DNA from: Laetmonice hystrix
Taxonomy: Eukaryota
Length of the DNA stretch: 64,000 nucleotides
Reading direction: 5' to 3'
NCBI GenBank assembly: GCA_965235115.1
Contig: OZ249440.1
Span: forward strand, 7,130,001-7,194,000
Below, in pieces: positions 22,095 to 64,000 of this stretch; the first letter of the stretch is position 1; every line of letters begins with the position of its first letter. Position numbers and translations under genes: made by a program. Below the pieces are notes generated by a model. The model ran no database searches. It was not told the DNA's origin and worked only from the letters and a program-made list of their open reading frames with translations.

Positions 22095-22836
22095 ATGAGC
22101 GAGCAGAGATCAGACGCGGAGGTCGACTCGGACGGGTGTCCGGTCGGGTCAGACGTGGACGTAGAGAACGAGTCCCGGTCGGGATCTCCGGTTAGTACCG
22201 GCCGGTCCACCCCGGGATCTCCGGCCCCGTCCCCGGCCCCGTCCCCGGTCCCGTCCCCGGCCTCGAGCTGTGAGAACGACCCACAGCACTCAAGGCTTCA
22301 CCGTCACCACAGCCATCACTTCCAGCGTCACCACCATCATCATCACCACCATCACCTCCACAACCACAGCAGTAACAACACTAACACCAGCACCAGTGAC
22401 TCTTCAAAACTTTCCTTTGGGATCAGCCGGATACTCAGTGAACCTTCCAGTAAAAGTTCAAGTTTAAAACACAATAGTCACAATAACAACAACAACAACA
22501 ACAACAGTAGCACGCCCAATGAAAACGGACACTTGGGTCACGGGCAGCATCAGCAGCATCATCACCACGGACAACACTATGGCCTGCTGGGTCAGGCCAT
22601 ACCAGCCGGCTTTAACCCACCCCCGGCCCACATGGGGCTTGGTGCCGGCGGCCCGCACCCTGGCCACCCGGGCGGGCCACACGTGGCAGGACTTGTCGGC
22701 TTGGAGCCCGGGTCACAACAACTAACGGGGCATGGTGTGATCAAGGTACCGGCTCACCGGCCCGTGCCGCTCGGTCCTCTCAGCTTCTCACCGCTCATGT
22801 TCCCGTGGATGCAGGACAGGAAGGAACGACTTACAG
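22095..22836 (+). CDS. Tlx: Tlx homeobox gene, coding exon 1 (N-terminus, eh1 motif, hexapeptide)
   Basis: The ORF from ATG 22095 encodes LSFGISRILS (eh1/Groucho-binding FxIxxIL), GVIKVPAHRP and FPWMQDRKERLT (Pbx-interaction hexapeptide), all typical of TLX proteins. It ends at donor ACAG|GTATGT (GT at 22837, phase 1). The exact start codon is inferred from the ORF. Confidence 0.93.
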
Positions 22837-25241
22837 GTATGTCTTACACCACTCTCACTTCAAACTCCACCATTATTACTCGGCCTATATACCATCCGAA
22901 CGTTAACAAAGGCGACAACCATTTACAAGTAGCCTATAGCCGACCTATTTGGATCTCTTATTTTATTTTAATGAACAGACTTGATATCACAAAATGACAT
23001 CACAAATCAGTAGACATAGGGTAGGTTGGAGATAGAGCCTTTAAACAGACTGATGTACAACATCAACGGAACCTACAAGAAGCCATGGGCCTCAAGCATG
23101 CATTTCACATTTTTAGACCTCTATACCTCAAGGCCAGACTCGAAAGTGATATGCGAATGCATTTGTAAACCTAATTGGTTACATGGCTATACGTTTGAGA
23201 AAATACTGCAAGTTGTCGTCTACAGATTAGTTGCTATAAAAGTCGATGATAATCAGGGATAATGTAAGTATAATGCTAGTTTAGGCCTACGTAACCATTT
23301 GCTGTTGATAAACATTGCCTGTTCGTGAGTATTGTAGGTTGACACGCGACATTGACAAGGTCATGATTATTGAACTAATCCTCATGTATCCTCTCAAAGA
23401 GAAGGTCGGATCCTCAGTATGTTGGGAAAGGGCCTGTATATATTATGATAGGTGTATATATTGTGCTGACATGAAGACATTGTCGACACGATGCCGGTAT
23501 CAGGGCAGTGTATATTAGGTCATACCGCCCCAGGCTAATACCACGACAAGCGAGCTGACTTGGTGGTGGCTGACACTAAAACGCTGATTGCGGTCTTCCG
23601 CCACGTGGGGGCGGGCGGGTCGGACGCGGGCGTTCACCGCGCTGGTACAGACAGACGCACGCACGTGGCCGGGGCCAGACGGGCATGCTGTGCACGTGCA
23701 AGCGCGGTGTAAATGAGACATCCACTCGCTTCCCATTATCCTCCACAAACTACAATTAGACAGTGATTAAATGTGCATTTCAGAAAAGAGCATCCCTTGA
23801 TTTGCTCGCCTGCTAATTTTCTTTGTCTGACCCTGAGCTCTGCGTGGTGTATGATATATATCGTTGTGTTCTTAATGTCACTTTGGTATGTAGTGATATT
23901 ATATAAGTAAGAACGTAAAGAAGAACTGATTATAAGCATGCATATACATGGACATGGTGCATTCCTGAATTTATGTCACCATAATAAAAAGTTTCATTGC
24001 GTACCTATATATAGTATAAAAAGTTCGTCTTTGAGACCATGATGGAATTGCCTCCATGAAAAGGTCAAAAGCTAACAATGGGACCCTGGTTTTTTTATAT
24101 ACCGACCTAAGTGGTGCGTGTGATCGCATCTAAATTGGCCAGAACAAGGGAACCATTCTGTAGCTTTCAGCAACAAACCTGAGCCAAATAAAACACGTCT
24201 TTATACGTTATCAGCCTAAGTGTGAGGCAACTACGGCGACAAGTGATGCTTCTCATACCCACACTGTCCAGGGATATAGTCAGAGATTTTTTTATTCCTG
24301 TGAGTTTGCCTTTCATGGAAGATACCGAGGTGGTTGTGAGACCGTACAGTAAAAGTTTGTAGATAGTTGGTGGTGAGAATATACGGTATAGGGTAAAGAT
24401 TTGAAAAGATAATATATAAGGAAGGCGATATAAGTTTGACCTCTATGTACTGACAACCGTGTCAGTGACGGAGTGGCATAGACTCGTGAATAACCTCATC
24501 AACAGACGTTCGTAATTACTTCCATGTTTTTAGCGATAGAGAAAAATAATAATAATAAAGCCAGGGGCACCAAGCACAAGCACCAAAAACAAGCAGTTTA
24601 ATGCCCTTATAGTCGGTGTACATATTGAAATTTTCTGTTGAGCGACCTTATACATTGTGTATAAGTCTTACATTACCACAGTTCCGCACACGACAGGGTT
24701 GCAAGGTCTATACATACATTAGTCCCATTTCGTCAAACACCGCAGCAAAAACTTTCAGTAATTACCACTGGGATGATTTACAAAGGATCAGTTTTAAGAC
24801 CCAGTTTTCTCCACTGCATGAACGGTTTTCCAGTTTCCTGGCGATTTGCAGTTAAAGGAGGCAGCCAAAGCAAAGGAGCGGATAGCAAGCAAATATTGTG
24901 AGGAGAGTTCCAACTTATAAACCCAGAATTATAAGGTAATCGCCAGAACAGATCGCCATCCGCGTCCTAAACCGAGAAACTGCCGACCACGCCGAGGACA
25001 CGTGGGGACATGATACATCATGAGTACACACGAACAATGAGTCTGTTAATGGTACTCCATCACTGACGTGGGACGTACTTCATGGCCCTGTATACATGGT
25101 GTACTTGATGTGGAAGGCAGTGACCGGCTGTTAGGAGCTATGTACCGTACCGTTGGTGGTACGAATTGCTGGTGTAAGTCGAGTAGGTACGCGGACAGCG
25201 GTGAGCATGAGCGCCACACGTGTCGCTACACCTCAGGCACA

Positions 25242-25747
25242 CCCCCGCCCGCCCGCCCGTCCGCCCGTCCCTCCGCCCGGCCGGTCACAGACCCCCGCCC
25301 GCCCGCCCGTCCCTCCGTCCGTCCGTCCATCCGTCCCTGCCTCCCTCCGTCCCTGCCTCCCTCCGTCCCTCCGCCGCCCCTCCCTCCGTCCCTGCCTCCC
25401 TCCGTCCCTCCGTCCCTCCCTCCGTCCCTCCTTCCCTCCGCCCGCCCCTCCCTCCGTCCACCCCTCCCTCCGTCCCTCCGTCCCTGCCTCCCTCCGTCCC
25501 TCCGTCCCTCCGTCCCCCCGTCCCTCCCTCCGTCCCTCCTTCCCTCCGCCCGCCCCTCCCTCCGTCCACCCCTCCCTCCGTCCCTGCCTCCCTCCGTCCC
25601 TGCCTCCCTCCGTCCTTCCGTCCGCCCCTCCCTCCGTCCCTCCCTCCGTCCCTCCCTCCGCCCCTCCTTCCCTCCGTCCGCCCCTCCCTCCGTCCACCCC
25701 TCCCTCCGTCCCTCCGTCCCTCCGTCCCTCCGTCCCTCCGTCCGTCC
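25242..25747. repeat. C-rich low-complexity repeat (CCTC/CCGT tetramer mosaic)
   Basis: A run of CCCTCCGT / CCCTCCCT units. Confidence 0.95.
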
Positions 25748-25903
25748 AGTATCGCCGTCCAACACCCAGCAACTGTCTCTAGCCTCAGGGCCTTGACCCC
25801 CTTTATGTTGGACATATAAGAACAATGATTAAGATTGAAATGATAACGATGAGGACATGCTATATATCATAACGTACAGAGAAGGAGGACGTACAATAAT
25901 CCG

Positions 25904-27146: not shown

Positions 27147-28065
27147 CATGAAGATACAAAGAAAGGTTGGACACAGCGGGATCGACCTGTGCCTAGTGCT
27201 GACGGCTGCTAGTCCTGCACAGTTTCTCCCTGAGTGTATCAGCCAAGATACGGCCAGCCATCAACCCCGTATCACGGCCCCTGACTTCATGTTGACGGGG
27301 GCTAGCACACAGGGCACTAAACAAACCCTGCGCCAGGAAAACATCTAAATATTTTTTTAGAATTCGATTAAAAAGTTTCTGTTTAGATGCTAAGAGTGGC
27401 AGACGATAGCAAGGTGGACATATTGGTGTGATTACAGCCAATCCATTAAGGATTGAAACTCTCTAATGGACAGATACAAGTGTGAATTAAACCAATCACT
27501 TTAATAGGGATTTGAGGCAAAGTCGAGGTCAAATTACGCCCCGGTTAATCTAATTACAACACTCCATTTAACACTGTAGTCCGATCCTGGTCGCAAAGTC
27601 TTTCTAATTGGGACAGCAATTGCTTGGGTGTCCCGCCCCCGGGGAATTCGGTGCCGCCCCTTGGGAACATTGCCATCAGCCCGGCGGGTGTTGTGGTCGA
27701 GGTGGGCGGGGTGGATCTAATGATGTTAATCACATCAAAGTGGCCAGAGACGGCGATTGTCATATACCTAGGGAGACATGTCTAAGGCTACATTATAATG
27801 AGATGAATGAAGCGTTATTAATGACTTTCTGCCTCAGTGGGAGAGTTCAGCTTATCATTCAAAGTTTATTTACAACAGTTGTGTTTCTATCAGAGAACGT
27901 CCAAATGACTGTCAATGTGTCAAAGTTTATTATCCCGATATGTGTACTAATCGGATGGCTTCACACTGATGACACTGTTGTCCTAAATCCTTGAAATGGT
28001 ACCGGCCCATGTCGTCCCGTTTCTCTAAATCTTGATTCATTGAGCAATGCGGTACCTCAGTCCGT

Positions 28066-29592
28066 CACTGATGGTCACTGTCCCTGTCCTTACACTGATG
28101 GCCCACACTGTCCCTGTCCTTACACTGATGGCCCACACTGTCCCTGTCCTTACACTGATGGCCCTCACTGTCCCTGTCCTTACACTGATGGCCCACACTG
28201 TCCCTGTCCTTACACTGATGGCCCACACTGTCCCTGTCCTTACACTGATGACCCACACTGTCCCTGTCCTTACACTGATGGCCCACACTGTCCCTGTCCT
28301 TACACTGATGGCCCACACTGTCCCTGTCCTTACACTGATGGTCCACACTGTCCCTGTCCTTACACTGATGGTCACTGTCCCTGTCCTTACACTGATGGCC
28401 CACACTGTCCCTGTCCTTACACTGATGGCCCACACTGTCCCTGTCCTTACACTGATGGTCCACACTGTCCCTGTCCTTACACTGATGGTCACTGTCCCTG
28501 TCCTTACACTGATGGCCCACACTGTCCCTGTCCTTACACTGATGGCCCACACTGTCCCTGTCCTTACACTGATGGCCCACACTGTCCCTGTCCTTACACT
28601 GATGGCCCACACTGTCCCTGTCCTTACACTGATGGCCCACACTGTCCCTGTCCTTACACTGATGGTCCACACTGTCCCTGTCCTTACACTGATGGTCACT
28701 GTCCCTGTCCTTACACTGATGGCCCACACTGTCCCTGTCCTTACACTGATGGCCCACACTGTCCCTGTCCTTACACTGATGGCCCACACTGTCCCTGTCC
28801 TTACACCGATGGCCCACACTGTCCCTGTCCTTACACTTATGGCCCACACTGTCCCTGTCCTTACACTGATGGCCCACACTGTCCCTGTCCTTACACTGAT
28901 GCCCACACTGTCCCTGTCCTTACACTGATGCCCACACTGTCCCTGTCCTTACACTGATGGCCCACACTGTCCCTGTCCTTACACTGATGGCCCACACTGT
29001 CCCTGTCCTTACACTGATGCCCACACTGTCCCTGTCCTTACACTGATGGCCCACACTGTCCCTGTCCTTACACTGATGGCCCACACTGTCCCTGTCCTTA
29101 CACTGATGGCCCACACTGTCCCTGTCCTTACACCGATGGCCCACACTGTCCCTGTCCTTATACTGATGGCCCACACTGTCTCTGTCCTTACACTTATGGT
29201 CCCTGTCCCTGTCCTTACACTGATGGTCACTGTCCCTGTCCTTACACTGATGGCCCACACTGTCCCAGTCCTTACACTGATGGCCCACACTGTCCGTGTC
29301 CTTACACTGATGGCTCACACTGTCCCTGTCCTTACACTGATGGCCCACACTGTCCCTGTCCTTACACTGATGGCCCACACTGTCCGTGTCCTTACACTGA
29401 TGGCCCACACTGTCCCTGTCCTTACACTGATGGCCCACACTGTCTCTGTCCTTACACTGATGGCCCACACTGTCCCTGTCCTTACACTGATGGCCCACAC
29501 TGTCCCTGTTCTTACACTGATGGCCCACACTGTCCCTGTCCTTACACTGATGGCCCACACTGTCCCTGTCCTTACACTTGTGCCGACACTGC
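28066..29592. repeat. Minisatellite, 30-bp unit, about 50 copies (27- and 29-bp variants)
   Basis: TCCCTGTCCTTACACTGATGGCCCACACTG repeated. Confidence 0.98.
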
Positions 29593-30548
29593 ACCTTGTT
29601 ACCGTTCCTGTCCCCAATTGTCCCTGATTGACTGTCAATCCGTATCGACGTGTATCGCAGCCTGTTCTGTTGTTGTGTTTAGATCCTTGACGTAGAAACA
29701 TGCCCGCACACTGGTACTGTATCCTACATCCCTGTAGAAACATGCCCGCACACTGGTACTGTATCCACATGTTTCCAGCAATCAGTCTGGTTCCGATAAA
29801 TCACAGGCGTGGCCTGTCATATTTCCGTCAACATTCCTGCTGTGTTTAGCTTGAATCGTCGATGGGTCAGACGGAGCTATCGGTGGCGGTAGAGATCGGT
29901 GTTGGGGGACAGAGAGAGATTGAAGGCGGGTTTTGTGAGATCGCTCCAGTCTGGCACACGTTAACGGACACATCGCCGGCCAAACAACGGTCGTACAGCT
30001 CTCTGAGGACGACTGAATGTCACTGGAGATTAAACAGATGTTTATAGACAGGGATTACGGATTAACTGGCCGCCTAGCAACATGTGAACGCTGTATATAT
30101 CTGTTCACGCTGTCTGTGATTCATTTACTGCATATCGCACGGGCGGCCAGCAAGGAAACATCTTCTGATAACAACTTGTTTTTAATCTCCATTATATAAA
30201 CAATATGCCGTCAAAGTCCTATACTTGCTGCCTTAACACCAACGCCTTGAGATACACTTCACTATGCCAAGTCATACATCAAAAACAAAATAGAAACAAA
30301 TTAAATCGATCTTTGTACGCGATTTTAAAAGTGCAAAAATACATGCATCAAATCAATGGTGCGGCATGCATGGACCACAAGCCCTATTTGCCTTAGGTCT
30401 GCATGTGTGTGATAATGCAAGTATGAATAATAATAAAAAACACATGCAAAGAATATATAAAAAAAATTATTTGAAGTTGAGGTTATTATCCCCATGCACT
30501 GGAGACTGACCCTAACATTATATTTCCCATCTTATCTTGTGCTTTCAG

Positions 30549-30765
30549 TGACAAGGCGTATAGGACACCCGTACCAAAACCGAACGCCGCCCAAACGTAA
30601 GAAGCCACGGACATCGTTTACACGACTTCAGATTATTGAGTTGGAGAAACGCTTTCACCGACAGAAGTACCTCGCCTCCGCCGAGCGCTCGCAGCTTGCT
30701 AAGGCTCTCAAAATGACAGACGCTCAGGTCAAAACCTGGTTTCAAAATAGACGGACCAAATGGAG
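30549..30765 (+). CDS. Tlx: Tlx homeobox gene, coding exon 2 (homeodomain)
   Basis: Acceptor TTTCAG|TG and donor GAG|GTATGT. Encodes (V)[71 protein letters not shown](R), with the Tlx-diagnostic Thr at homeodomain position 47. Phase is compatible with exon 1 (G+TG=Val). Confidence 0.98.
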
Positions 30766-55298: not shown

Positions 55299-55441
55299 CG
55301 GAGTGCTTCAAAAAAGGAAACCAAGAATAAAGTGCTGATTATAAGGAGAGATGTTGTAACTTAATGTAACTCTAACAAGCCTGCTCCTGAAATAAACAAA
55401 TTCAAATTTTAAAAAAATTCATTTTTGTTGGAAACACCCTG
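55299..55441. mobile_element. Tc1/mariner-type MITE remnant, about 143 bp, 160 bp upstream of the exon-3 acceptor
   Basis: TA|CGGAGTGCTTCAAAAAA ... TTGTTGGAAACACCCTG|TA: a degenerate CAGGGTGTTTC-type TIR pair with TA flanks. Confidence 0.5.
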
Positions 55442-55600
55442 TATGCAGACGGTAAAAGTGGCCCTACATTCCTTGGCTTGGAATACGGTAAACATATAGA
55501 TCTACACTGATATCTGCTTATACACAGGACTGGCACTATATCTGGTATAAATTGGTAATAGTAAATGATTATCCTGAATGTCTCCTCCTGTATGTTGTAG

Positions 55601-55835
55601 GCGTCAGACGGCCGAGGAACGCGAGGCTGAGAGGCAGGCAGCGAACCGCTTCATGCTCAGTCTCCAGGCGGAGGCCAGCAAGAACATGTACAACAACCCT
55701 GACCCTTTGTGTCTGAGTAACGCGTCGTTGAGTGCTCTCCAGAACCTCCAGCCGTGGGCCGAGGACCAGCAGGAACAACAAGACAGGCCCAACTACCTCA
55801 ACGTCGCCTCGCTCACCTCGCCTTCACTGGTATGA
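55601..55835 (+). CDS. Tlx: Tlx homeobox gene, coding exon 3 (C-terminus, stop TGA)
   Basis: Acceptor TGTTGTAG|G; AG+G completes Arg. Encodes [24 protein letters not shown]...[19 protein letters not shown]...SLV*, matching the conserved TLX C-terminus. Spliced CDS 742+217+235=1194 nt = 397 aa + stop. Confidence 0.96.
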
Positions 55836-57474
55836 TAGCGAGGCTATCCGTGACGTCACTGACGTAACTAGGTCATGTATCCACCGCCATCTTAAACCGC
55901 GACGAAAAACGTCAACGAGAATGAGTATAGGCTAAGGAGCGCTCAAATAGGCTATGTGGTCGAACTAAATGTCCTTACTCTATGGGGCTGGGTAGAGGGG
56001 GCGTATACTGGCCATACGGAATCGGAGCCAAAAGTCTGTGATCAAGTGGTCTGTAGATTACCTAGCCGAGGACGATTCTATCGGCCTATTGTCTAATCTG
56101 TAACTTTAGGTATCATAATCATCATGAACTCTTAAAATCAATGCATGATCGCCACATTTCTGGATCAGTTTCTGTCGGCAAAAACCTACTTACATTGAAT
56201 TGCTATAGTATTAGTAGCCTTTATATAAAGTTCGGATCCTCTCAGGAGTGGTGTCCGAGAATTATTTCGACATCAACAATGTGTATTCTGTAAAATATCA
56301 ACAAAATGTATCCCATAATCTGTGTTGTTACTTGACCTCTTTTATACAGGGCCTAGATTACTCTTGACATGGGTTACAAGGGATAGTGTGTGATTTTTAA
56401 AACATCACGTTATCGTTACAGGTCTGTTGGTCTACCGGTATAATATGAAAGTGATTACCCAAGGCATTAATTCTTTTCGAACTATTTAGATTATTTCGAA
56501 ATATTAAAAACCTAAGATGAACACGTGAAAGCACTCACTATAGCCAACCTGTCCTGCCTGAACGTGCGGTTATATAAACCAACCAATTTGAACCAATTCA
56601 CTTTATTCACATACCCAAGGTATAATATACTTCAAGGATCCTTTGCTAAACTCGATCGACGGGGCATGTAACACGTACATTGTTTTCACGTAGATGTATA
56701 TAGATGTGTGGCAGTGAGTGCCTGTCCTCCTTCCTATTTAAACGTTTCGGGCCGTAAATCGTTTCTGACCAGAGTGTTTACTCGTATAACTACTTAAATT
56801 CTTAGCGCGACAGAAAGAACGCATGACATGGTAGTCAGAAGATATCCGGAACTGTCGCATTTCGTCCCTTAAAGAATGTTGACCGTCAAACTCTGCACCT
56901 GGAGGTACGTCAGAACGAGATGCCCTGCATTGTCTCGCGTGAGTTTGTACGAGACTGGCGACAGGTGGCGCCTTGTACGAAAACTCGTGCTCCCCAGTCG
57001 CCTATACATAACGTGTGGGTCGAATATACTAAAAGGGCTGTCAGGAAAACGGCCGTTTAGGTAGACTAGCAGCTGTAGACGAACGAAGTAATTCGCTCGC
57101 CTATAGCAGGAATCTGATACACAGCTGTGTATAAGCACCTGGATATAATATCGCTTCATCTCAAACCTTTCATTGAACGTAACCATGTCCCCCCCCCCCC
57201 CACGACATTATATCCTACCTTGTACTTTAAAAAACTCTTTGTGGCTGCAACTAAACTTGTTAAAAATGTATATATGGCAGTGTAGGGGCGTGCAATTGTA
57301 CATAAGATATGTCATATATTCATGTATATGTGTATGTATACACACACTGTCTACTTTGAGGTCATCCCTGTGTATTTGTTGGAATGTACGAGTGAGATGA
57401 CAACAACAAGTATTTCACCCGGAAAGTTCATTGTACAGGTGATTCCTGGCGTATCAAAGTGTGGAAATTCTCGA

Positions 57475-57480
57475 AATAAA
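57475..57480 (+). promoter_or_regulatory. Candidate Tlx polyadenylation signal (3' UTR about 1.65 kb)
   Basis: First canonical AATAAA I found after the stop at 55835, followed by a GT/T-rich tract (GTGTATTTTTTGTTTGTG). An ATTAAA variant lies at 56503. Confidence 0.5.
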
Positions 57481-57566
57481 TCTATTTATAAGGAAGTCAA
57501 GTGTATTTTTTGTTTGTGAGATGTTAGAAATGTGCGTATACTGTATATGGAATTCTTCACCTCATC

Positions 57567-58472
57567 TGATGGCCCAGGTCCCACATCCCATACATTATTC
57601 CATCTCCTGAAGCCACATCCCTATATAATACCGGGCCCACATCTAACATCACATGTCCCATTGCACAAAGACACGCCCCTACCCTACCCAAGCATAACAT
57701 CTAATACCCCACATCCCATCGTAAGAGGGCACCCCCTACCTTTCCCCTGCAGATCACATCTGATGTCCCATGTCCCATCACAAGAGGACAGACCCCTACC
57801 CCTGGAGATTACATCTGATGTCCCAGGTCCTATCACAAGAGGACACACCCCTACCCTGCCCCAGCAGATCACGTCTGATGTCCCAGGTCCCATCACAAGA
57901 GGACACATCCCTACCCTGCCCCAGCAGATCACGTCTGATGTCCCAGGTCCCATCACAGGAGGACACAACCCTACCCCTGCAGATCACATCTGATGTCCCA
58001 TGTCCCATCACAAGAGGACACACCCCTACCCCTGCAGATCACATCTGATGTCCCATGTCCCATCACAAGAGGACACACCCCTACCCCTGCAGATCACATC
58101 TGATGTCCCATGTCCCATCACAAGAGGACACACCCCTACCCCTGCAGATCACGTCTGATGTCCCATGTCCCATCACAAGAGGACACACCCCTACCCTGCA
58201 GATCACATCTGATGTCCCATGTCCCATCACAAGAGGACACACCCCTACCCTGCCCCAGCAGATCACGTCTGATGTCCCATGTCCCATCACAAGAGGACAC
58301 ACCCCTACCCCTGCCCCAGCAGATCACATCTGATGTCCCATGTCCCATCACAAGAGGACACACCCCTACCCCTGCAGATCACATCTGATGTCCCAGGTCC
58401 CATCACAAGAGGACACACCCCTACCCCAGCAGATCACATCTGATGTCCCAGGTCCCATCCCCTGAAGCCACA
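57567..58472. repeat. Minisatellite, about 55-60-bp unit, about 13 intact copies plus degenerate leading copies
   Basis: CAGATCACATCTGATGTCCCATGTCCCATCACAAGAGGACACACCCCTACCCCTG repeated from about 57748; decayed copies upstream. Confidence 0.95.
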
Positions 58473-59891
58473 GACTACTCCTGTCTCATGAGTGTCAACA
58501 CCACACCAGTTATAGATGATATGCATATTAAAACTGACTGCTAGTCGAAACAGAAGCTTGGCGCCATCGACCCAGCGCGCAGAGAAGACCATTTTATTTT
58601 CCTAACACCTTGCCATTACGATAATTCCATTGAGCGTGTCAGTCCGCGGTTCTCGCCTGGCGCTCATTCTATCATATTGCAGGCCAGGCCTCTCGGAGCC
58701 GATCGATGAAGATCATACTAATGGGAGGTACCGGTCGTCTCAAGGTCCGGTCTTCTTGTGGTGCGTGTACCTTAGGCAACATGTGCTTGTAATGCAATAT
58801 GCACACTGGAATTGAGGCGGATGGCAAATCTAACCCTGCGGACCCTTGGAATACGGGCAATGATTTATGAAACCGTACGGCTTCCTCTTTCTAGTCGTTT
58901 ATACCAAGTCACAATGTATTTGCATTATGATCAGTTCAATCGTGTACGCTTGCGGAAGGGGTTTTAAGATATAGTATGTATATTATATCATGTCGTCAAC
59001 CATCTCCCATAGTGAAATATTTGAAAAGGTAACGATTTACACAGACTTTAAGATTTGTTATATAATCTCCTGTCAACACGTGTATAACTCACTATTATCC
59101 TTTTTTTAATATAAAAAAAATAATTCGGCTATATATTCGCGGCCCTTCCGTGACCCTTTCTAGTCTAAACACGACTTGCATCCATTGGCATGAACACAAA
59201 CCAGACTCCATCAACATACAAGTCAACCAACTGGTGACGGTGGGCGGAGGTCGAGTCTGCCTTGGCCGATAAGCGGGGGTACAACACGTAGTCTTTGTTA
59301 GTCTGCTGACGGCCGTGCCCTGTCTGAGCTCCGACCTGCAGCTTGGCAATTCTTCACGGTGTTGTGATGAAAATGATCTATTGCTAACGTCATGGGTCGT
59401 TGTCAGATGTCCAATTAAGACGTAGGTGTTGTGTTCACTGTTAAGCTGATTCCTGACATATTGAACCCGAGGGTGTGTTTGTTTTCCGTTCACGCGGATC
59501 CCAACACACCCCGCCCCCCTTTCCCTCCCAGTAGGGTTGGGCAAATCCGGGTACTTTTTTTGAAACGAGTGTTTTTTATGGCCAAATTACCTGCTGAATA
59601 CGAATATGACAATGAAATTTGCCTGCCAGAATGTTTTCGGTCGGTAAATTCGGAAAATCCAAAATGATGGCGAAAATCCGAGATTTTTTCATCAGGATTT
59701 TCATTTTCGACTCTACCATCATTCAAATATGTCAAATAACAGGGGTTTCAGCTCGCTAAAAATCAATTTTGAAATCCAAACCGCCGGAAAATGCACCATG
59801 AACGAGTTAAAGCCATAATTAATGAATTTCCAAGAAAAAAATTACTCGATAGACATCATTACATTCCATCAACTCCAGACCAGGTCAACAC

Positions 59892-60132
59892 TTAGCTCAG
59901 AAAACTGAGCAAAAGTCCATCAACGTTCGGCACAATGTCTGATTCCGGCTTTATCGCATTTCTGATGGACTGCTTGAATTCTGTGGTAGTGAATTTTTGC
60001 ATTTTGTATGTCCCGTACATCTTTACTCTCCTCATTTTCCTGATTGCCAGAGCAATCGTACACCGGAGGAATTTGATTTCCGCTAGTAGCTGTTTATCCG
60101 TCAGTTCGTTTAACTTTACCATATCCAGTGAA
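59892..60132 (-). pseudogene. Protein-like C-terminal coding remnant inside the TIR element (possible transposase fragment)
   Basis: Non-repetitive, charged, helix-like reading MVKLNELTDKQLLAEIKFLRCTIALAIRKMRRVKMYGTYKMQKFTTTEFKQSIRNAIKPESDIVPNVDGLLLSFLS*, cut off at the inner element. No catalytic motif is visible. Confidence 0.45.
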
Positions 60133-61024
60133 CAGGCCTCCCAGCAGCCCTTGAAAAAAAGTAGGATTCTACTCCAAAAAAGTAGGACCTCTAATCTTGG
60201 AAAAGTAGGAGAGTTATTTTTGAAAAACAATGTAATAGAGGGCTATTCTTACTTCGACATAGCCATGTACACACTGATGTATCAGACAAAAACTTCATGG
60301 TATTATGTATACATACATGAGCAGAAGGAATAAGCAAATTCGCAGAAAGTGTCTAGTTTGTGGCCGTAGGTCACAACCCGAGGCCATTGGCCTCGGAGGG
60401 GGAGGATCAAGGGAGGGGGGCATCCCCCTCCCTTGGTAGGAAAATTTTAAAATGTTGACATTATGTGAGTGCATTTTGGTGGTATTTGAGAGGGATATAG
60501 GACCTTGTATATTACCTAACATGCCTCGAAGGGTGAGGGGGAGGGTCAAGGGAGGGGAGCATCCCCCTCCCTTGGTAGGAAAATTTGAAAATGTTGACAT
60601 TGTTGACATTAGTGCATTTTGGTGGCATTTGAGAGGGATATTAAGGGTATATCACCTAACATGGATTTGGACAAGTTTCACCCTAACCCCCTATATATAT
60701 GCGTTTTTGAGATCTCACCATATTTACATCGCACAAATTTCGAACCAGAAAAAGCGGAAACCCGCGAATCCTTACACATACTTATTTTCGACCGCATTAT
60801 TAACCAATGAGAGAGCATTCCTGTATTTTACTCCTGCTGGGGATTTTTCTGCAGCTAGTCCTACTGGGAAGTGCCTGGATTAATTATACCCCGTTATTAA
60901 TTATATAATGTCCATTAAATGTGATGCTACCTTTTCCGATTTTTTAGTAGGACTTGGTTAGAAAAATAGGAAAAGTAGGACTGTATAGGACGGAGTCTCA
61001 ACAAGTGGAAAAGTAGGACGGCTA
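60133..61024. mobile_element. Nested MITE-like insertion with AGTAGGA subterminal repeats and an internal 133/140-bp tandem duplication
   Basis: Starts CAGGCCTCCCAG. Six AGTAGGA copies (60160, 60181, 60204, 60946, 60974, 61012). Duplicated block 60391-60523 / 60524-60663. Right boundary uncertain. Confidence 0.5.
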
Positions 61025-61502
61025 TAGAAGTACACCACGTCATCAAATGTTTTCTTCGCCCGTTTACTGAGCGTTATCTGTTGTTCCTCCTCTATTGCTA
61101 TCATTTAATTTGGAAATACACGAAAGAAAACACTTGACGAATCCAAAGTAAATCCAAAGCCACCGAAAATATACCAAATACACGTCAAAAGCTGCCAAAC
61201 TGCATTATGTGAAGAAACAATAGCTCCTACAAAGAATACAATGGTAAATTAGGTTTCTACGATCCTGAAAACAGAAATCATTGCATATTAGGAGTAATTG
61301 TGTATTATTCAACTGTGGTCGATGTCGAAAATTTGCGATTTTTGGCCGCCATTTTTATTTTTTGAGATTTACTGACCGAAAATATTATCGCAGCCCATTT
61401 TTGTCCCCGAATTCGTGTTCAGTGGACAATTTGGCCATAGAAAACACTCGTTTTCCTCGAATTTGTTGAAAAAAGGCATTATTCGCCCAACCCTACTCCC
61501 AG

Positions 61503-62105
61503 TGCGCCCACATATTTACGCATACGCAATCTCCGGCGTGATATAGTGCTCGCCTCCTCGTCACTGACAACCTCGGCGGGGAGGGGGCCCAGGTTTCGGA
61601 AATTGTCAACCGTGATGATTAATTGCATCATGTTTTTAGTCTGTAGTGTGATTCCTTGTATATGCCGGTTTTTTGCTGTGATGACGCTATATCGTATGGC
61701 ACCGGTGGCGACACCATACGGCACGTGACAAATCTATTGCGGAAGCATGTGCATATATTAGAATATGATGACTTGTGTCCTCGCCAACTGCCTTCGAGGA
61801 CATGTATTTATGTCCCCGTAAGAACCACCGTCATTGGTGAGGCCAAGCATTCAGGCTGCGCTGCCTTGCAGCTATCTGTGTGGTGCGCAGTTTGACCGTA
61901 TATGTTTACGCCTTTCTACCAACGACCTCCATTGAATCATTAATATTCTCTGTGATGGTTTGCATATTGTCATCAAACACCACAAGGCACGTCTTTGTCC
62001 TAGCCTGCTGCCCACCTGTAATGTTGGCCGTGCATAATCAAGTTATGTAGGCGATTTATTAATGTAATCGTATTGGACTGTAGCTCCATCGAACGGTCTA
62101 ATTGT
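61503..62105 (-). mobile_element. Degraded non-LTR retrotransposon (CR1/L2-group-like) ORF2 C-terminal remnant
   Basis: Frameshifted minus-strand translations give, in the expected order, IRP.ME(Y)S (about 62071-62102), QRRALWCL (about 61986-62000), QWRSLVERRKHIR (61896-61934) and LPAEVVS (61563-61583). These resemble the post-RT motifs RPxLEY / QRRAxRF / LxWxxLxERR / WNxLPxxVV. Confidence 0.6.
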
Positions 62106-63045
62106 ATAAGATGTGTTCATCTCGTTCCCCCATTCTTGTAGACCTACACTCGCCCCTATATCTCCATTGTTGGATACAATGATGTAGAGCAGTTATTCTA
62201 CTTTCATTTGACGATTTCGTTTTCCACTTAGCCTTCATGTATTTTCTTTAGAATACATAACTAGAGGCAGGGGCTTTTCTCTCTGTACCGATAAGAGATA
62301 TTTTCTCTGAAAATCGTTAGAAAATATTATGTTTTGTAAATGACTGCTAAGTGTGATTATTACACAGGAGATATCTTATCTAACCCTGGTTAATACTGTA
62401 ATACCACCTTATCTTTATACTCAGTGTACCTATAGCGTTCCCAAACGCCTACTTCCGGTATAAGAATCCCTGGATAGGGCGCCACGCCTGCATGGCTCAA
62501 CCCCTGCTTGCCCGTCCACCTCTTGGCGCGCCCTCTATGTAAACACACCCATGCTCTTCTCCTTATTAAATATCCTTTTAACAAACCACCTTTATTTGGC
62601 TTGTGGTGAACATTGGCTACACAGGTCACGTCGAGCGCACTTATTAATTGTTGGGCGCGGCTTATTACTTCTTCGCAGTCATTCACTGGCCTCCGTTCCT
62701 CTCTTTTAATTCCCGGCCTAATATCATTTCTACCACTACCGCAGTTCAGGCGTCGCGCGCCTAATCAGTTTAGTGGTGACTTATGAAATACATGGAGTGG
62801 CGGCTAATCCAGCGACATAAGCCACACCACTGCGGCACCTGAAACTAGGGGCCTGTACAACAGCCGGACCCGAGAACCTGAGAGTGAGAGGCAGAGAATG
62901 GATCATGGACGCGCCCACCCCACCCATTCCGTTATAACATAACCAGATTGGATGCTAAAGTTGCCATAATTAGGCCCTACCATATATTAGGCCTGTAGAC
63001 AGGATTCATAGAAAAAACAACGTGGCCGAAAAAACAAAAACAAAC

Positions 63046-63261
63046 AAAATTCATTTTTGTTGGAAACACCCTGTATGCAGGCGGTAAAAGTGGCCCTACA
63101 TTCCTTGGCTTGGAATACGGTAAACATATACACTGATATCTCCTTATACACAGGACTGGCACTATATTTGGTATCGTTATAAATTGGTAATAGTAAATGA
63201 TGAGTCTCTGTCGTCGATGATTATCCTGAATGTCTCCTCCTGTATGTTGTAGGCGTCAGAC
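63046..63261 (+). pseudogene. Diverged duplicate of the Tlx intron-2 3' end plus the first 9 nt of exon 3
   Basis: Aligns to 55414-55609 with about 3 substitutions and 3 indels (-6, +6, +20). The acceptor CTCCTCCTGTATGTTGTAG|GCGTCAGAC is intact. Confidence 0.9.
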
Positions 63262-63500
63262 AGAAGATTTTGAGTGGGGCAATGGCCCATCCATCGTTAA
63301 AACACTATAGATGTAATGTTCTTACCCTCCGGAGGGGTAGGGGTAGGGGATTGCACCCCCCTTACGAAGTAGCCTACGAGTAATCTTTCTTTTTTTCTGC
63401 TTGAAATGTTCAATCCAAACATACACAAACCCCCTCCCCTTGGCACCCCCTTTGGCACCCACAACCCCCCCCCCTTGGCGCCAACCTGGATCCGCCCCTG
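63262..63500. mobile_element. MITE-like remnant (right end CTGGATCCGCCCCTG)
   Basis: The right terminus is the reverse complement of CAGGGGCGGATCCAG, a common MITE terminus, and poly-C/G tracts lie inside. The left terminus appears truncated at the junction with the Tlx duplicate. Confidence 0.45.
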
Positions 63501-64000
63501 CCTCCGAAGCTATAGCCTATATAATTATATATATATGTGATCATGAATTATCCTCAGCCAGGTACATAGATCTAGCCGTGAGACCTCGGCAGTATAGAAG
63601 AAGAAACGTTGTGGTTCCATCCCAGATGTCTACCCTGTCTCTCCGACTTCACTGTCAAATGACCAGCGACCATAGAACGATCAGGCTTCTGAGTCATCCA
63701 ACCCACATTATCTTGTCATCTGCTCACAGGGAAAACGATTCAAATTAAATTAACTACTGCCAACAATACCGGACTCTATACATATACTGTACAGGGGGCC
63801 CAGACCTTTGGATAAGTTTGGCCTATAGGACAAGAACATATTAGCTTTTAGTCACCAGCGTGCCCTATATCTAAACAGATGCGCAAGCATTACACAATAG
63901 CAAGGCGTTTTTTTCGTATATAGGTATACATTTTGTATAGACCTTGAAGTAATTCGTTGTGTCGATGAGATATAGTCATGTGTTACAGGGCTCCAGGGCA

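What the first reader, a model, noticed from the sequence alone, without database searches (positions are those of the whole stretch)
63046..63310. Duplicated Tlx exon-3 splice acceptor 7.6 kb downstream: a candidate alternative terminal exon
Seen: 63046-63261 copies 55414-55609 (the intron-2 end plus GCGTCAGAC of exon 3) with about 3 substitutions and three indels. One indel is a 20-nt insert that duplicates ATGAT. The pyrimidine tract and TGTAG|G acceptor are identical to the real one. Splicing exon 2 (ends 30765) to 63253 stays in frame and reads ...RRTKWR-RQTEDFEWGNGPSIVKTL* (TAG 63308-63310), a 338-aa protein. It keeps eh1, the hexapeptide and the homeodomain but loses the conserved EEREAERQ helix and the DPLCL..LQNLQPW motif. 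Inference: this could be a newly born alternative last exon giving a C-terminally truncated Tlx, or an inert relic of a partial duplication. Use would need exon-3 skipping and read-through past the AATAAA at 57475; I saw no AATAAA in 63310-64000.
Basis: partly seen in the sequence, partly recalled or inferred. Interest (0 to 1): 0.75.

Follow-up and report, generated by a model that had tools for sequence, protein, structure and literature searches.

The report
Stray copy of Tlx splice acceptor
A roughly 220-base copy of the end of the last Tlx intron, with the first 9 bases of the last exon, really does sit 7.6 kb downstream of the gene, but it looks like a young, harmless DNA-repair scar, and nothing shows it is used as an exon.

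Summary
Window 63042-63261 copies 55411-55609, the end of Tlx intron 2 plus GCGTCAGAC of exon 3. There are 3 substitutions in 193 aligned bases and 3 indels. The last 45 nt, with the pyrimidine tract, the AG and 9 exonic nt, are identical. The genome holds only these two copies, and both flanks of the copy are single-copy DNA. No other piece of exon 3 or its 3'UTR lies within the next 20 kb. Contigs built from reads of three runs (one sample) join the copy to both flanks at the flanks' depth, so it is not a haplotype mis-join.

No RNA run was listed, so junction reads could not be sought. The 18-codon tail is as long as chance allows. The clean 45-nt block is not significant (P about 0.23). 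Use would need read-through past the gene's poly(A) signal and skipping of an identical acceptor transcribed 7.6 kb earlier.

Best reading: a young, neutral, one-step local templated duplication that left a decoy acceptor. Earlier notes of this scan list many tandem acceptor duplications ("mirages") elsewhere in this genome. This one is not tandem.

The parts
63042..63261 (+). The copy: a duplicate of the intron-2 end plus the first 9 nt of Tlx exon 3
   Evidence: It is one of only two copies in the genome. Read-derived contigs join it to both flanks.
55411..55609 (+). Parent segment: the last 190 nt of Tlx intron 2, the AG acceptor (55599-55600) and GCGTCAGAC of exon 3
63217..63261 (+). 45-nt block identical to the parent: 36 intronic nt (candidate branch region CCTGAAT, pyrimidine tract, TGTAG) plus 9 exonic nt
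   Evidence: (D10). Read contigs break exactly at 63261, as expected at a shared block longer than the 31-letter word.
63253..63310 (+). Hypothetical exon body: completes the codon for R, then RQT EDFEWGNGPSIVKTL and TAG. Only the first 9 nt are copied. The rest is single-copy intergenic DNA.
63197..63216 (+). 20-nt indel relative to the parent, flanked by ATGAT direct repeats. It is either an insertion in the copy or a microhomology-mediated deletion in the parent. No local template was found.
63172..63177 (+). 6-nt indel (TATCGT) relative to the parent
63168..63168 (+). One of the 3 substitutions. The assembly has T, but read contigs of X1-X3 have C, the parental state, so it is polymorphic or converted. 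63212 C>G also varies.
   Evidence: table 3 (L017 4708 and 4752; add 58460)
22095..22836 (+). Tlx exon 1 coding part (eh1 FGISRIL, FPWMQDRKERLT)
30549..30765 (+). Tlx exon 2 (homeodomain up to KW + AG)
   Evidence: Pfam Homeodomain, E 9e-22
55601..55835 (+). Tlx exon 3 coding part with its stop codon. The C-terminal region is conserved across animal phyla.
   Evidence: One search gave 221 hits, including proteins named TLX1/TLX3/Tlx from vertebrates, a spider, an annelid and a mollusc.
57475..57480 (+). AATAAA of the canonical Tlx 3' end, which any transcript reaching the copy must read through
63373..63538 (+). Dispersed repeat (at least 547 first-look candidates in the genome) about 110 nt after the copy. 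It is not part of the duplicated segment.
   Evidence: high depth
63744..63749 (+). First poly(A)-signal variant (ATTAAA) after the hypothetical stop codon

Best explanation
This is a real, evolutionarily young, non-tandem duplication of about 200 bp of the Tlx intron 2/exon 3 boundary, placed into single-copy intergenic DNA 7.6 kb downstream. It lies 5.6 kb past the gene's AATAAA. It most likely arose in one step, as a short locally templated insertion during break repair or a replication template switch (MMBIR/FoSTeS or polymerase-theta type). It has since gathered a few substitutions and indels. It left a sequence-perfect decoy 3' splice site, but that site is expected to be silent or nearly so. 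Transcription normally ends before it. The identical genuine acceptor is transcribed 7.6 kb earlier and is followed by the conserved exon. Nothing downstream looks like a selected exon. Shown here: the duplication, its uniqueness, its presence in reads and its youth. Inferred: the repair mechanism and the lack of use.
For: There are only two copies in the 627-Mb genome. The flanks 62300-63045 and 63255-63345 are single-copy. No other homology exists between 30766-57700 and 57701-84000, so the edges are discrete and not decayed. Three substitutions in 193 nt is 1.6%, close to the allelic differences of read contigs in the same region (0.7-1.5%, table 8). One of the three is polymorphic, with the parental base. 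Contigs of X1-X3 cover 62179-63261 without gaps (X1: 2 other letters). Depths are 55.6, 59.5 and 32.5 against 57.5, 62 and 46.9 (left flank) and 51.7, 55.6 and 33.8 (right flank). X1 and X2 contigs from 63232 cross the right junction. The 18-codon tail is unremarkable: the chance of no stop in 18 random codons is 0.42. With 6 differences, the chance that none falls in the last 45 nt is 0.23. No gene-like ORF lies in the next 20 kb. No Rfam family or unusual fold is present in either copy. Published tandem intron/exon boundary duplications ('mirages') do not disturb normal splicing (PMC3087553, PMC3902484).
Against: No transcript data could be examined, so 'unused' is an inference. The acceptor, pyrimidine tract and likely branch region are fully intact. 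The frame is open, and the 9 copied exonic bases finish the 60-residue homeodomain exactly (RRQT), so a product would be a plausible homeodomain protein. The repair mechanism is not demonstrated. Microhomology is limited to a run of A at the left junction and none is evident at the right junction. All reads come from one sample, probably the one that was assembled.
Confidence: 0.8

Rival explanations
1. It is a newly born alternative terminal exon. Some Tlx transcripts read through the canonical poly(A) site and splice exon 2 to 63253. That would give a 338-aa Tlx with eh1 and a complete homeodomain, but without the conserved C-terminal region.
For: The 36 intronic and 9 exonic nt at the acceptor are identical to the real site. 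The frame is open to TAG at 63308. ATTAAA lies 434 nt downstream. The copied 9 nt end exactly at homeodomain residue 60 (read from the translation).
Against: No RNA holder was listed. X4, the only run that could be RNA, does not cover 63042-63330 or any single-copy part of 58461-64460. Use needs read-through past AATAAA at 57475 and skipping of an identical acceptor made 7.6 kb earlier. The tail is unique DNA of chance length. The lost region is conserved across phyla, so loss would be costly rather than obviously useful. There is no sign of constraint on the copy (P = 0.23).
Confidence: 0.07
2. It is an assembly artefact: a haplotype fragment or chimeric read wrongly joined in, so the two copies are never on one molecule.
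For: All four runs come from one sample, which may be the assembled one. No single listed piece spans the whole 6-kb stretch.
Against: Only 199 nt are shared, and both flanks of the copy are unique and unlike the parent's flanks. A haplotig mis-join would carry long homologous flanks. The copy has its own three indels. Contigs built separately from the reads of three runs contain the left junction and the whole copy, and those of X1 and X2 contain the right junction, at single-copy depth.
Confidence: 0.03
3. It is the remnant of a larger event. A 7.6-kb tandem duplication of 55411-63041 was followed by a deletion that removed all of the second unit except its first 200 bp. Like the best explanation it is inert, but it arose in two steps.
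For: The copy starts exactly one 'unit' after the parent, which is what a tandem junction would give.
Against: The deletion would have to remove the rest of the second unit with nothing left. 63262-63345 is unique and matches nothing in 55610-63041. Two events are less parsimonious than one.
Confidence: 0.08
4. A mobile element captured or transduced the fragment (Helitron or Pack-type capture, a retroelement template switch onto Tlx pre-mRNA, or transduction by the neighbouring dispersed repeat).
For: A high-copy repeat lies 110 nt downstream. An A-rich tract abuts the left edge.
Against: The DNA directly on both sides of the copy is single-copy. Other copies of the repeat start at 63373 or later in the blastn check, and none in the genome search reaches upstream of about 63329. 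The A-rich tract is on the 5' side of the sense fragment, not a 3' tail. No target-site duplication is evident.
Confidence: 0.02

Closest known systems
'Mirage' minisatellites of lancelet genes (Adh3, globins BflGb6/9, troponin C, PGBD5): duplications of intron/exon boundaries
   Same: The duplicated unit spans an intron/exon boundary and carries an intact AG acceptor. The unit size (about 200 nt) is near that of the globin mirages (150-160 bp). Published cases do not disturb normal splicing (PMC3087553, PMC3902484). Earlier notes of this scan list many tandem cases in this same genome.
   Different: Mirages are tandem arrays lying next to the real boundary inside the gene. This is one isolated copy 7.6 kb away, beyond the gene's poly(A) signal, and there is no array at either place. 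I could not establish what animal this is.
Templated insertions from break repair or replication template switching (MMBIR/FoSTeS, polymerase-theta end joining)
   Same: A short stretch copied from nearby DNA on the same chromosome sits in otherwise unique sequence. Its breakpoints are discrete, with at most a few bases of microhomology (A-run at the left). For general properties see the abstracts of PMC8421209 and 10.1101/2019.12.20.882852 (listed).
   Different: About 200 nt is long for polymerase-theta fill-ins, by my own recollection, which I did not check here. No microhomology is evident at the right junction. The mechanism cannot be tested from one allele.
Alternative last exons born by duplication, and tandem exon duplication that gives mutually exclusive exons
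   Same: A duplicated acceptor could in principle compete with the original and give a different C-terminus.
   Different: Only 9 nt of the exon were copied. The rest of the 'exon' is random intergenic DNA. There is no transcript evidence, and the copy lies outside the known transcription unit.

Membership tests
Alternative terminal exon of Tlx | Competent 3' splice site (branch region, pyrimidine tract, AG) | tested here: met
   36 intronic and 9 exonic nt are identical to the genuine acceptor, so any 3' splice-site score based on 20 intronic and 3 exonic nt is the same for both.
Alternative terminal exon of Tlx | Spliced reads joining exon 2 (30765) to 63253 | not testable with these tools
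   The single run search returned no run on record as RNA. Read laying showed no X4 contig on 63042-63330, but the kind of X4 is unknown.
Alternative terminal exon of Tlx | Transcription reaches the site (read-through beyond AATAAA at 57475) | tested here: inconclusive
   X4 covers only the dispersed repeats at 60308-60731 and 63439-63500, and nothing single-copy in 58461-64460. Its library type and Tlx expression are unknown.
Alternative terminal exon of Tlx | Poly(A) signal shortly after the stop codon | tested here: inconclusive
   There is no AATAAA before 64828. ATTAAA at 63744 lies 434 nt after the stop.
Alternative terminal exon of Tlx | Signs of selection: conserved tail, constraint on the acceptor, presence in relatives | tested here: not met
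   The tail is unique DNA of chance length (0.42). The clean 45-nt block has P = 0.23. The nearest relative with DNA available (L018) aligns only in the coding part of exon 3, at 69%, so no relative is close enough to show the copy.
Mirage minisatellite (tandem intron/exon boundary duplication) | Repeat unit spans an intron/exon boundary | tested here: met
   The unit has 190 intronic and 9 exonic nt.
Mirage minisatellite (tandem intron/exon boundary duplication) | Head-to-tail tandem array adjoining the real boundary | tested here: not met
   There are two copies 7,632-7,652 nt apart. TRF and the repeat finder show no array at 55.4-55.6 kb or at 63.0-63.3 kb.
Tlx (T-cell leukaemia homeobox) gene, host of the parent segment | Homeodomain plus a Tlx-type N-terminal eh1 motif, FPWMQDRK motif and conserved C-terminal region | tested here: met
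   Pfam Homeodomain, E 9e-22. Exon 1 relatives share FGISRIL and VIKVPAHRP..FPWMQDRKERLTG. Exon 3 hits proteins named TLX1/TLX3/Tlx.
Templated insertion (MMBIR / end-joining fill-in) | Inserted stretch copied from nearby DNA, with discrete junctions in unique sequence | tested here: met
Templated insertion (MMBIR / end-joining fill-in) | Microhomology at both junctions, and an empty ancestral site | tested here: inconclusive
   At the left, both sequences share a run of A. At the right, none is evident. No haplotype or relative with an empty site was available.

The most novel reading that the evidence does not exclude
The decoy acceptor is used in a minority of read-through Tlx transcripts. 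That would make a lineage-specific 338-aa Tlx that keeps eh1 and the complete homeodomain but lacks the C-terminal region conserved across phyla. It would be an alternative last exon caught at birth, created by a 200-bp DNA-repair copy. A second novel reading is that it is a 'displaced mirage'. That would show that whatever process duplicates intron/exon boundaries in this genome can also act at a distance.
Probability: 0.07. Interest if true: 0.6.

Novelty: new member of a known kind. Interest (0 to 1): 0.15.

Why it matters
If it is silent, as seems likely, it is an ordinary small structural variant. Its use is mainly as a warning to gene predictors, because a perfect acceptor with an open frame sits 7.6 kb past a homeobox gene. 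It is also a natural control for splice-site choice, since an identical acceptor without exon context lies beyond the poly(A) site. If it were used, it would show how a repair scar of a few hundred bases can give a developmental transcription factor a new C-terminus in one step.

Tried and rejected
RNA test. 

Read laying on 58461-64460 gave Logan contigs only, so no starts, strands or junction reads.

Relatives. The exon 1 search found nothing closer than 59% identity. The exon 3 search found nothing closer than 80%. The one relative locus fetched (L018) aligns only in coding sequence. So the indels could not be polarised and the duplication could not be dated by an outgroup.

Embedded RNA gene in the duplicated intron end. 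There was no Rfam match of note (best E 0.16, far below the gathering score). Folding energies were no better than shuffles (z from +0.3 to +2.2). The AUGAUGA...CUGA pair created by the 20-nt insert is too closely spaced for a C/D snoRNA. Rejected.

Local template for the 20-nt insert. None was found in the window.

Mobile-element capture. The flanks are single-copy. Rejected.

Downstream gene using the acceptor. No homeobox motif and no convincing ORF lie in the next 20 kb.

Cluster names for the relatives. None were returned, so the animal's identity stays open.

Full report

Yes. Reading both places and aligning them shows that window 63042-63261 repeats 55411-55609. The repeat finder reports the pair as families D7, D9 and D10, with spacings of 7632, 7626 and 7652 nt. 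blastn gives 166 nt at 90% including gaps (E 6e-55), plus a 45/45 identical block, 63217-63261 = 55565-55609.

A global alignment gives 190 matches and 3 mismatches. There are three indels:
- a 6-nt loss after 63128;
- a 6-nt gain, TATCGT, at 63172-63177;
- a 20-nt gain at 63197-63216, bounded by ATGAT on both sides.

The right edge is sharp, 9 nt into exon 3 (GCGTCAGAC). The left edge fades inside an A-rich tract.

**2. The gene.**

The host is a three-exon Tlx gene on the + strand.
- Exon 1 coding part: 22095-22836, with FGISRIL and FPWMQDRKERLT.
- Exon 2: 30549-30765, Pfam Homeodomain E 9e-22.
- Exon 3 coding part: 55601-55835.

The 77-aa product of exon 3 finds 221 relatives. These include proteins named TLX1, TLX3 or Tlx from vertebrates, a spider, an annelid and a mollusc, typically about 70% identical over about 70% of its length. 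So the region that the hypothetical isoform would lose is conserved across phyla.

The canonical protein has 397 aa. By my count on that translation, the nine copied exonic bases finish homeodomain residues 58-60 (RQT).

**3. Is it a repeat family, part of a bigger duplication, or an artefact?**

A search of the whole 627-Mb genome with 55400-55840 finds only the parent and this copy. The DNA to the left (62300-63045) and right (63255-63345) of the copy is single-copy.

I added 20 kb beyond the window. After that, a sensitive blastn of 30766-57700 against 57701-84000 finds nothing except these two pieces. So no further part of exon 3 or its 3'UTR lies downstream, and the edges are discrete rather than decayed.

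In the whole 84 kb there is only one other non-tandem duplicate of at least 100 nt. A dispersed repeat with at least 547 first-look candidates lies at 63373-63538 and is separate from the copy.

**4. Reads.**

The run search listed four runs of one sample, with kind unknown, kept as Logan contigs. I laid them on window 58461-64460 (L017; add 58460 to its coordinates). In X1, X2 and X3 a single contig runs from unique left-flank DNA through the whole copy to 63261.
- X1's contig covers 62179-63261 with 0 gaps and 2 other letters.
- Depths on the copy are 55.6, 59.5 and 32.5.
- Depths on the flanks are 57.5, 62 and 46.9 on the left and 51.7, 55.6 and 33.8 on the right.

The contigs stop exactly at 63261. 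That is expected where a shared block longer than the 31-letter word ends. In X1 and X2 the next contig starts 30 nt earlier (63232) and crosses the right junction.

A haplotype mis-join would carry long homologous flanks, and there are none. I therefore treat the copy as real, with the caveat that all reads are from one sample, possibly the assembled one.

Two sites in the copy differ between the assembly and the read contigs. One of them (63168) shows the parental base.

**5. Age.**

The 3 substitutions in 193 nt amount to 1.6%. Allelic differences of read contigs in the same stretch are 0.7-1.5% (table 8). The duplication is therefore very recent on an evolutionary scale.

The nearest relatives in the protein collections are only 59% (exon 1) and 80% (exon 3) identical. 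Where DNA was available it aligned only in coding sequence. So no outgroup could date the event or polarise the indels.

**6. Is it an exon?**

Three points favour it:
- the acceptor is identical over 36 intronic and 9 exonic nt;
- the frame is open;
- an ATTAAA lies at 63744.

Several points count against it, or are neutral:
- No RNA run was listed.
- The small run X4, whatever it is, lies only on dispersed repeats and nowhere on single-copy DNA of the 6-kb stretch.
- An 18-codon open tail has a chance probability of 0.42.
- With six differences, the chance that none falls in the last 45 nt is 0.23, so there is no sign of constraint.
- The tail is unique intergenic DNA.
- No gene follows within 20 kb.

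By inference from established knowledge of co-transcriptional splicing, use would also need two further things. Polymerase would have to read through the AATAAA at 57475. The spliceosome would have to ignore an identical acceptor made 7.6 kb earlier and backed by a conserved exon.

Neither copy holds a known RNA family or an unusually stable fold.

**7. What it resembles.**

Earlier notes of this scan list many tandem duplications of splice acceptors in this genome and call them 'mirages'. I followed that lead to two papers. [quoted passage not shown]

The present case shares the boundary-spanning unit but fails the tandem criterion and lies outside the gene. It works like a single decoy acceptor, not like a mirage array.

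Its anatomy best fits a one-step templated insertion by break repair or template switching: a short copy of nearby DNA with discrete junctions in unique sequence (for context see the abstracts of PMC8421209 and 10.1101/2019.12.20.882852). This mechanism is inferred, not shown. A 7.6-kb tandem duplication followed by a large deletion is a less parsimonious alternative.

**8. Verdict.**

The 'alternative terminal exon' reading is possible but has no support, and I give it about 7%. The 'inert relic' reading is favoured at about 80%. It is a new example of a known kind of event and of low interest, unless transcript data show that it is used.

Noticed in passing
window 59526-61496: An element of about 1.97 kb has TCCCAG(T) on both sides, like a target-site duplication, and terminal inverted repeats TAGGGTTGGGC.... 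Read contigs of X2 and X3 skip it (joint 59525->61497, 7 letters shared). X1 shows no such joint, and its contig runs on past 59524. It looks like a heterozygous, non-autonomous DNA-transposon insertion, possibly hAT-like. It contains the inverted-repeat arms 59563-59688 and 61328-61453.
   Followed up: partly
window 57638-58459: A 55-nt minisatellite (about 13 units, 89% matches) starts about 160 nt after the Tlx AATAAA at 57475.
   Followed up: no
L013 7955-8067 and 9532-9645 (= 71955-72067 and 73532-73645 on the extended scale): This is the only other non-tandem duplicate of at least 100 nt in the 84 kb examined: 114 nt, 96.5% identical, 1.6 kb apart, direct. It could be the ends of an element.
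   Followed up: no
relative's contig (ENA sample ERZ25072999, 379,659 bp), not in the window: At the Tlx exon 3 place of a distant relative, one contig carries two called 85-aa ORFs 1,979 bp apart, while its sister contig carries one. Exon 3 may be duplicated there too.
   Followed up: no
window 63253-63261: The nine copied exonic bases encode exactly the last three homeodomain residues (RQT). The duplication edge therefore coincides with the end of the homeodomain, which is probably chance.
   Followed up: partly
window 60396-60641 and 63329-63503: G/C-rich repeat pieces (motifs such as GGGAGGGGGGCATCCCCCTCCCTTGG and CCCCTCCCCTTGGCACCCCC) have very high read depth and are the only places covered by the small run X4. 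The repeat families were not classified.
   Followed up: no
window 27995-29692 and 25050-25816 (Tlx intron 1): Long coding-looking open frames here are really minisatellites (PYTDGPHCPC repeats; proline/serine-rich SLRPSVPP repeats). Intron 2 holds similar arrays near 39-45 kb.
   Followed up: no
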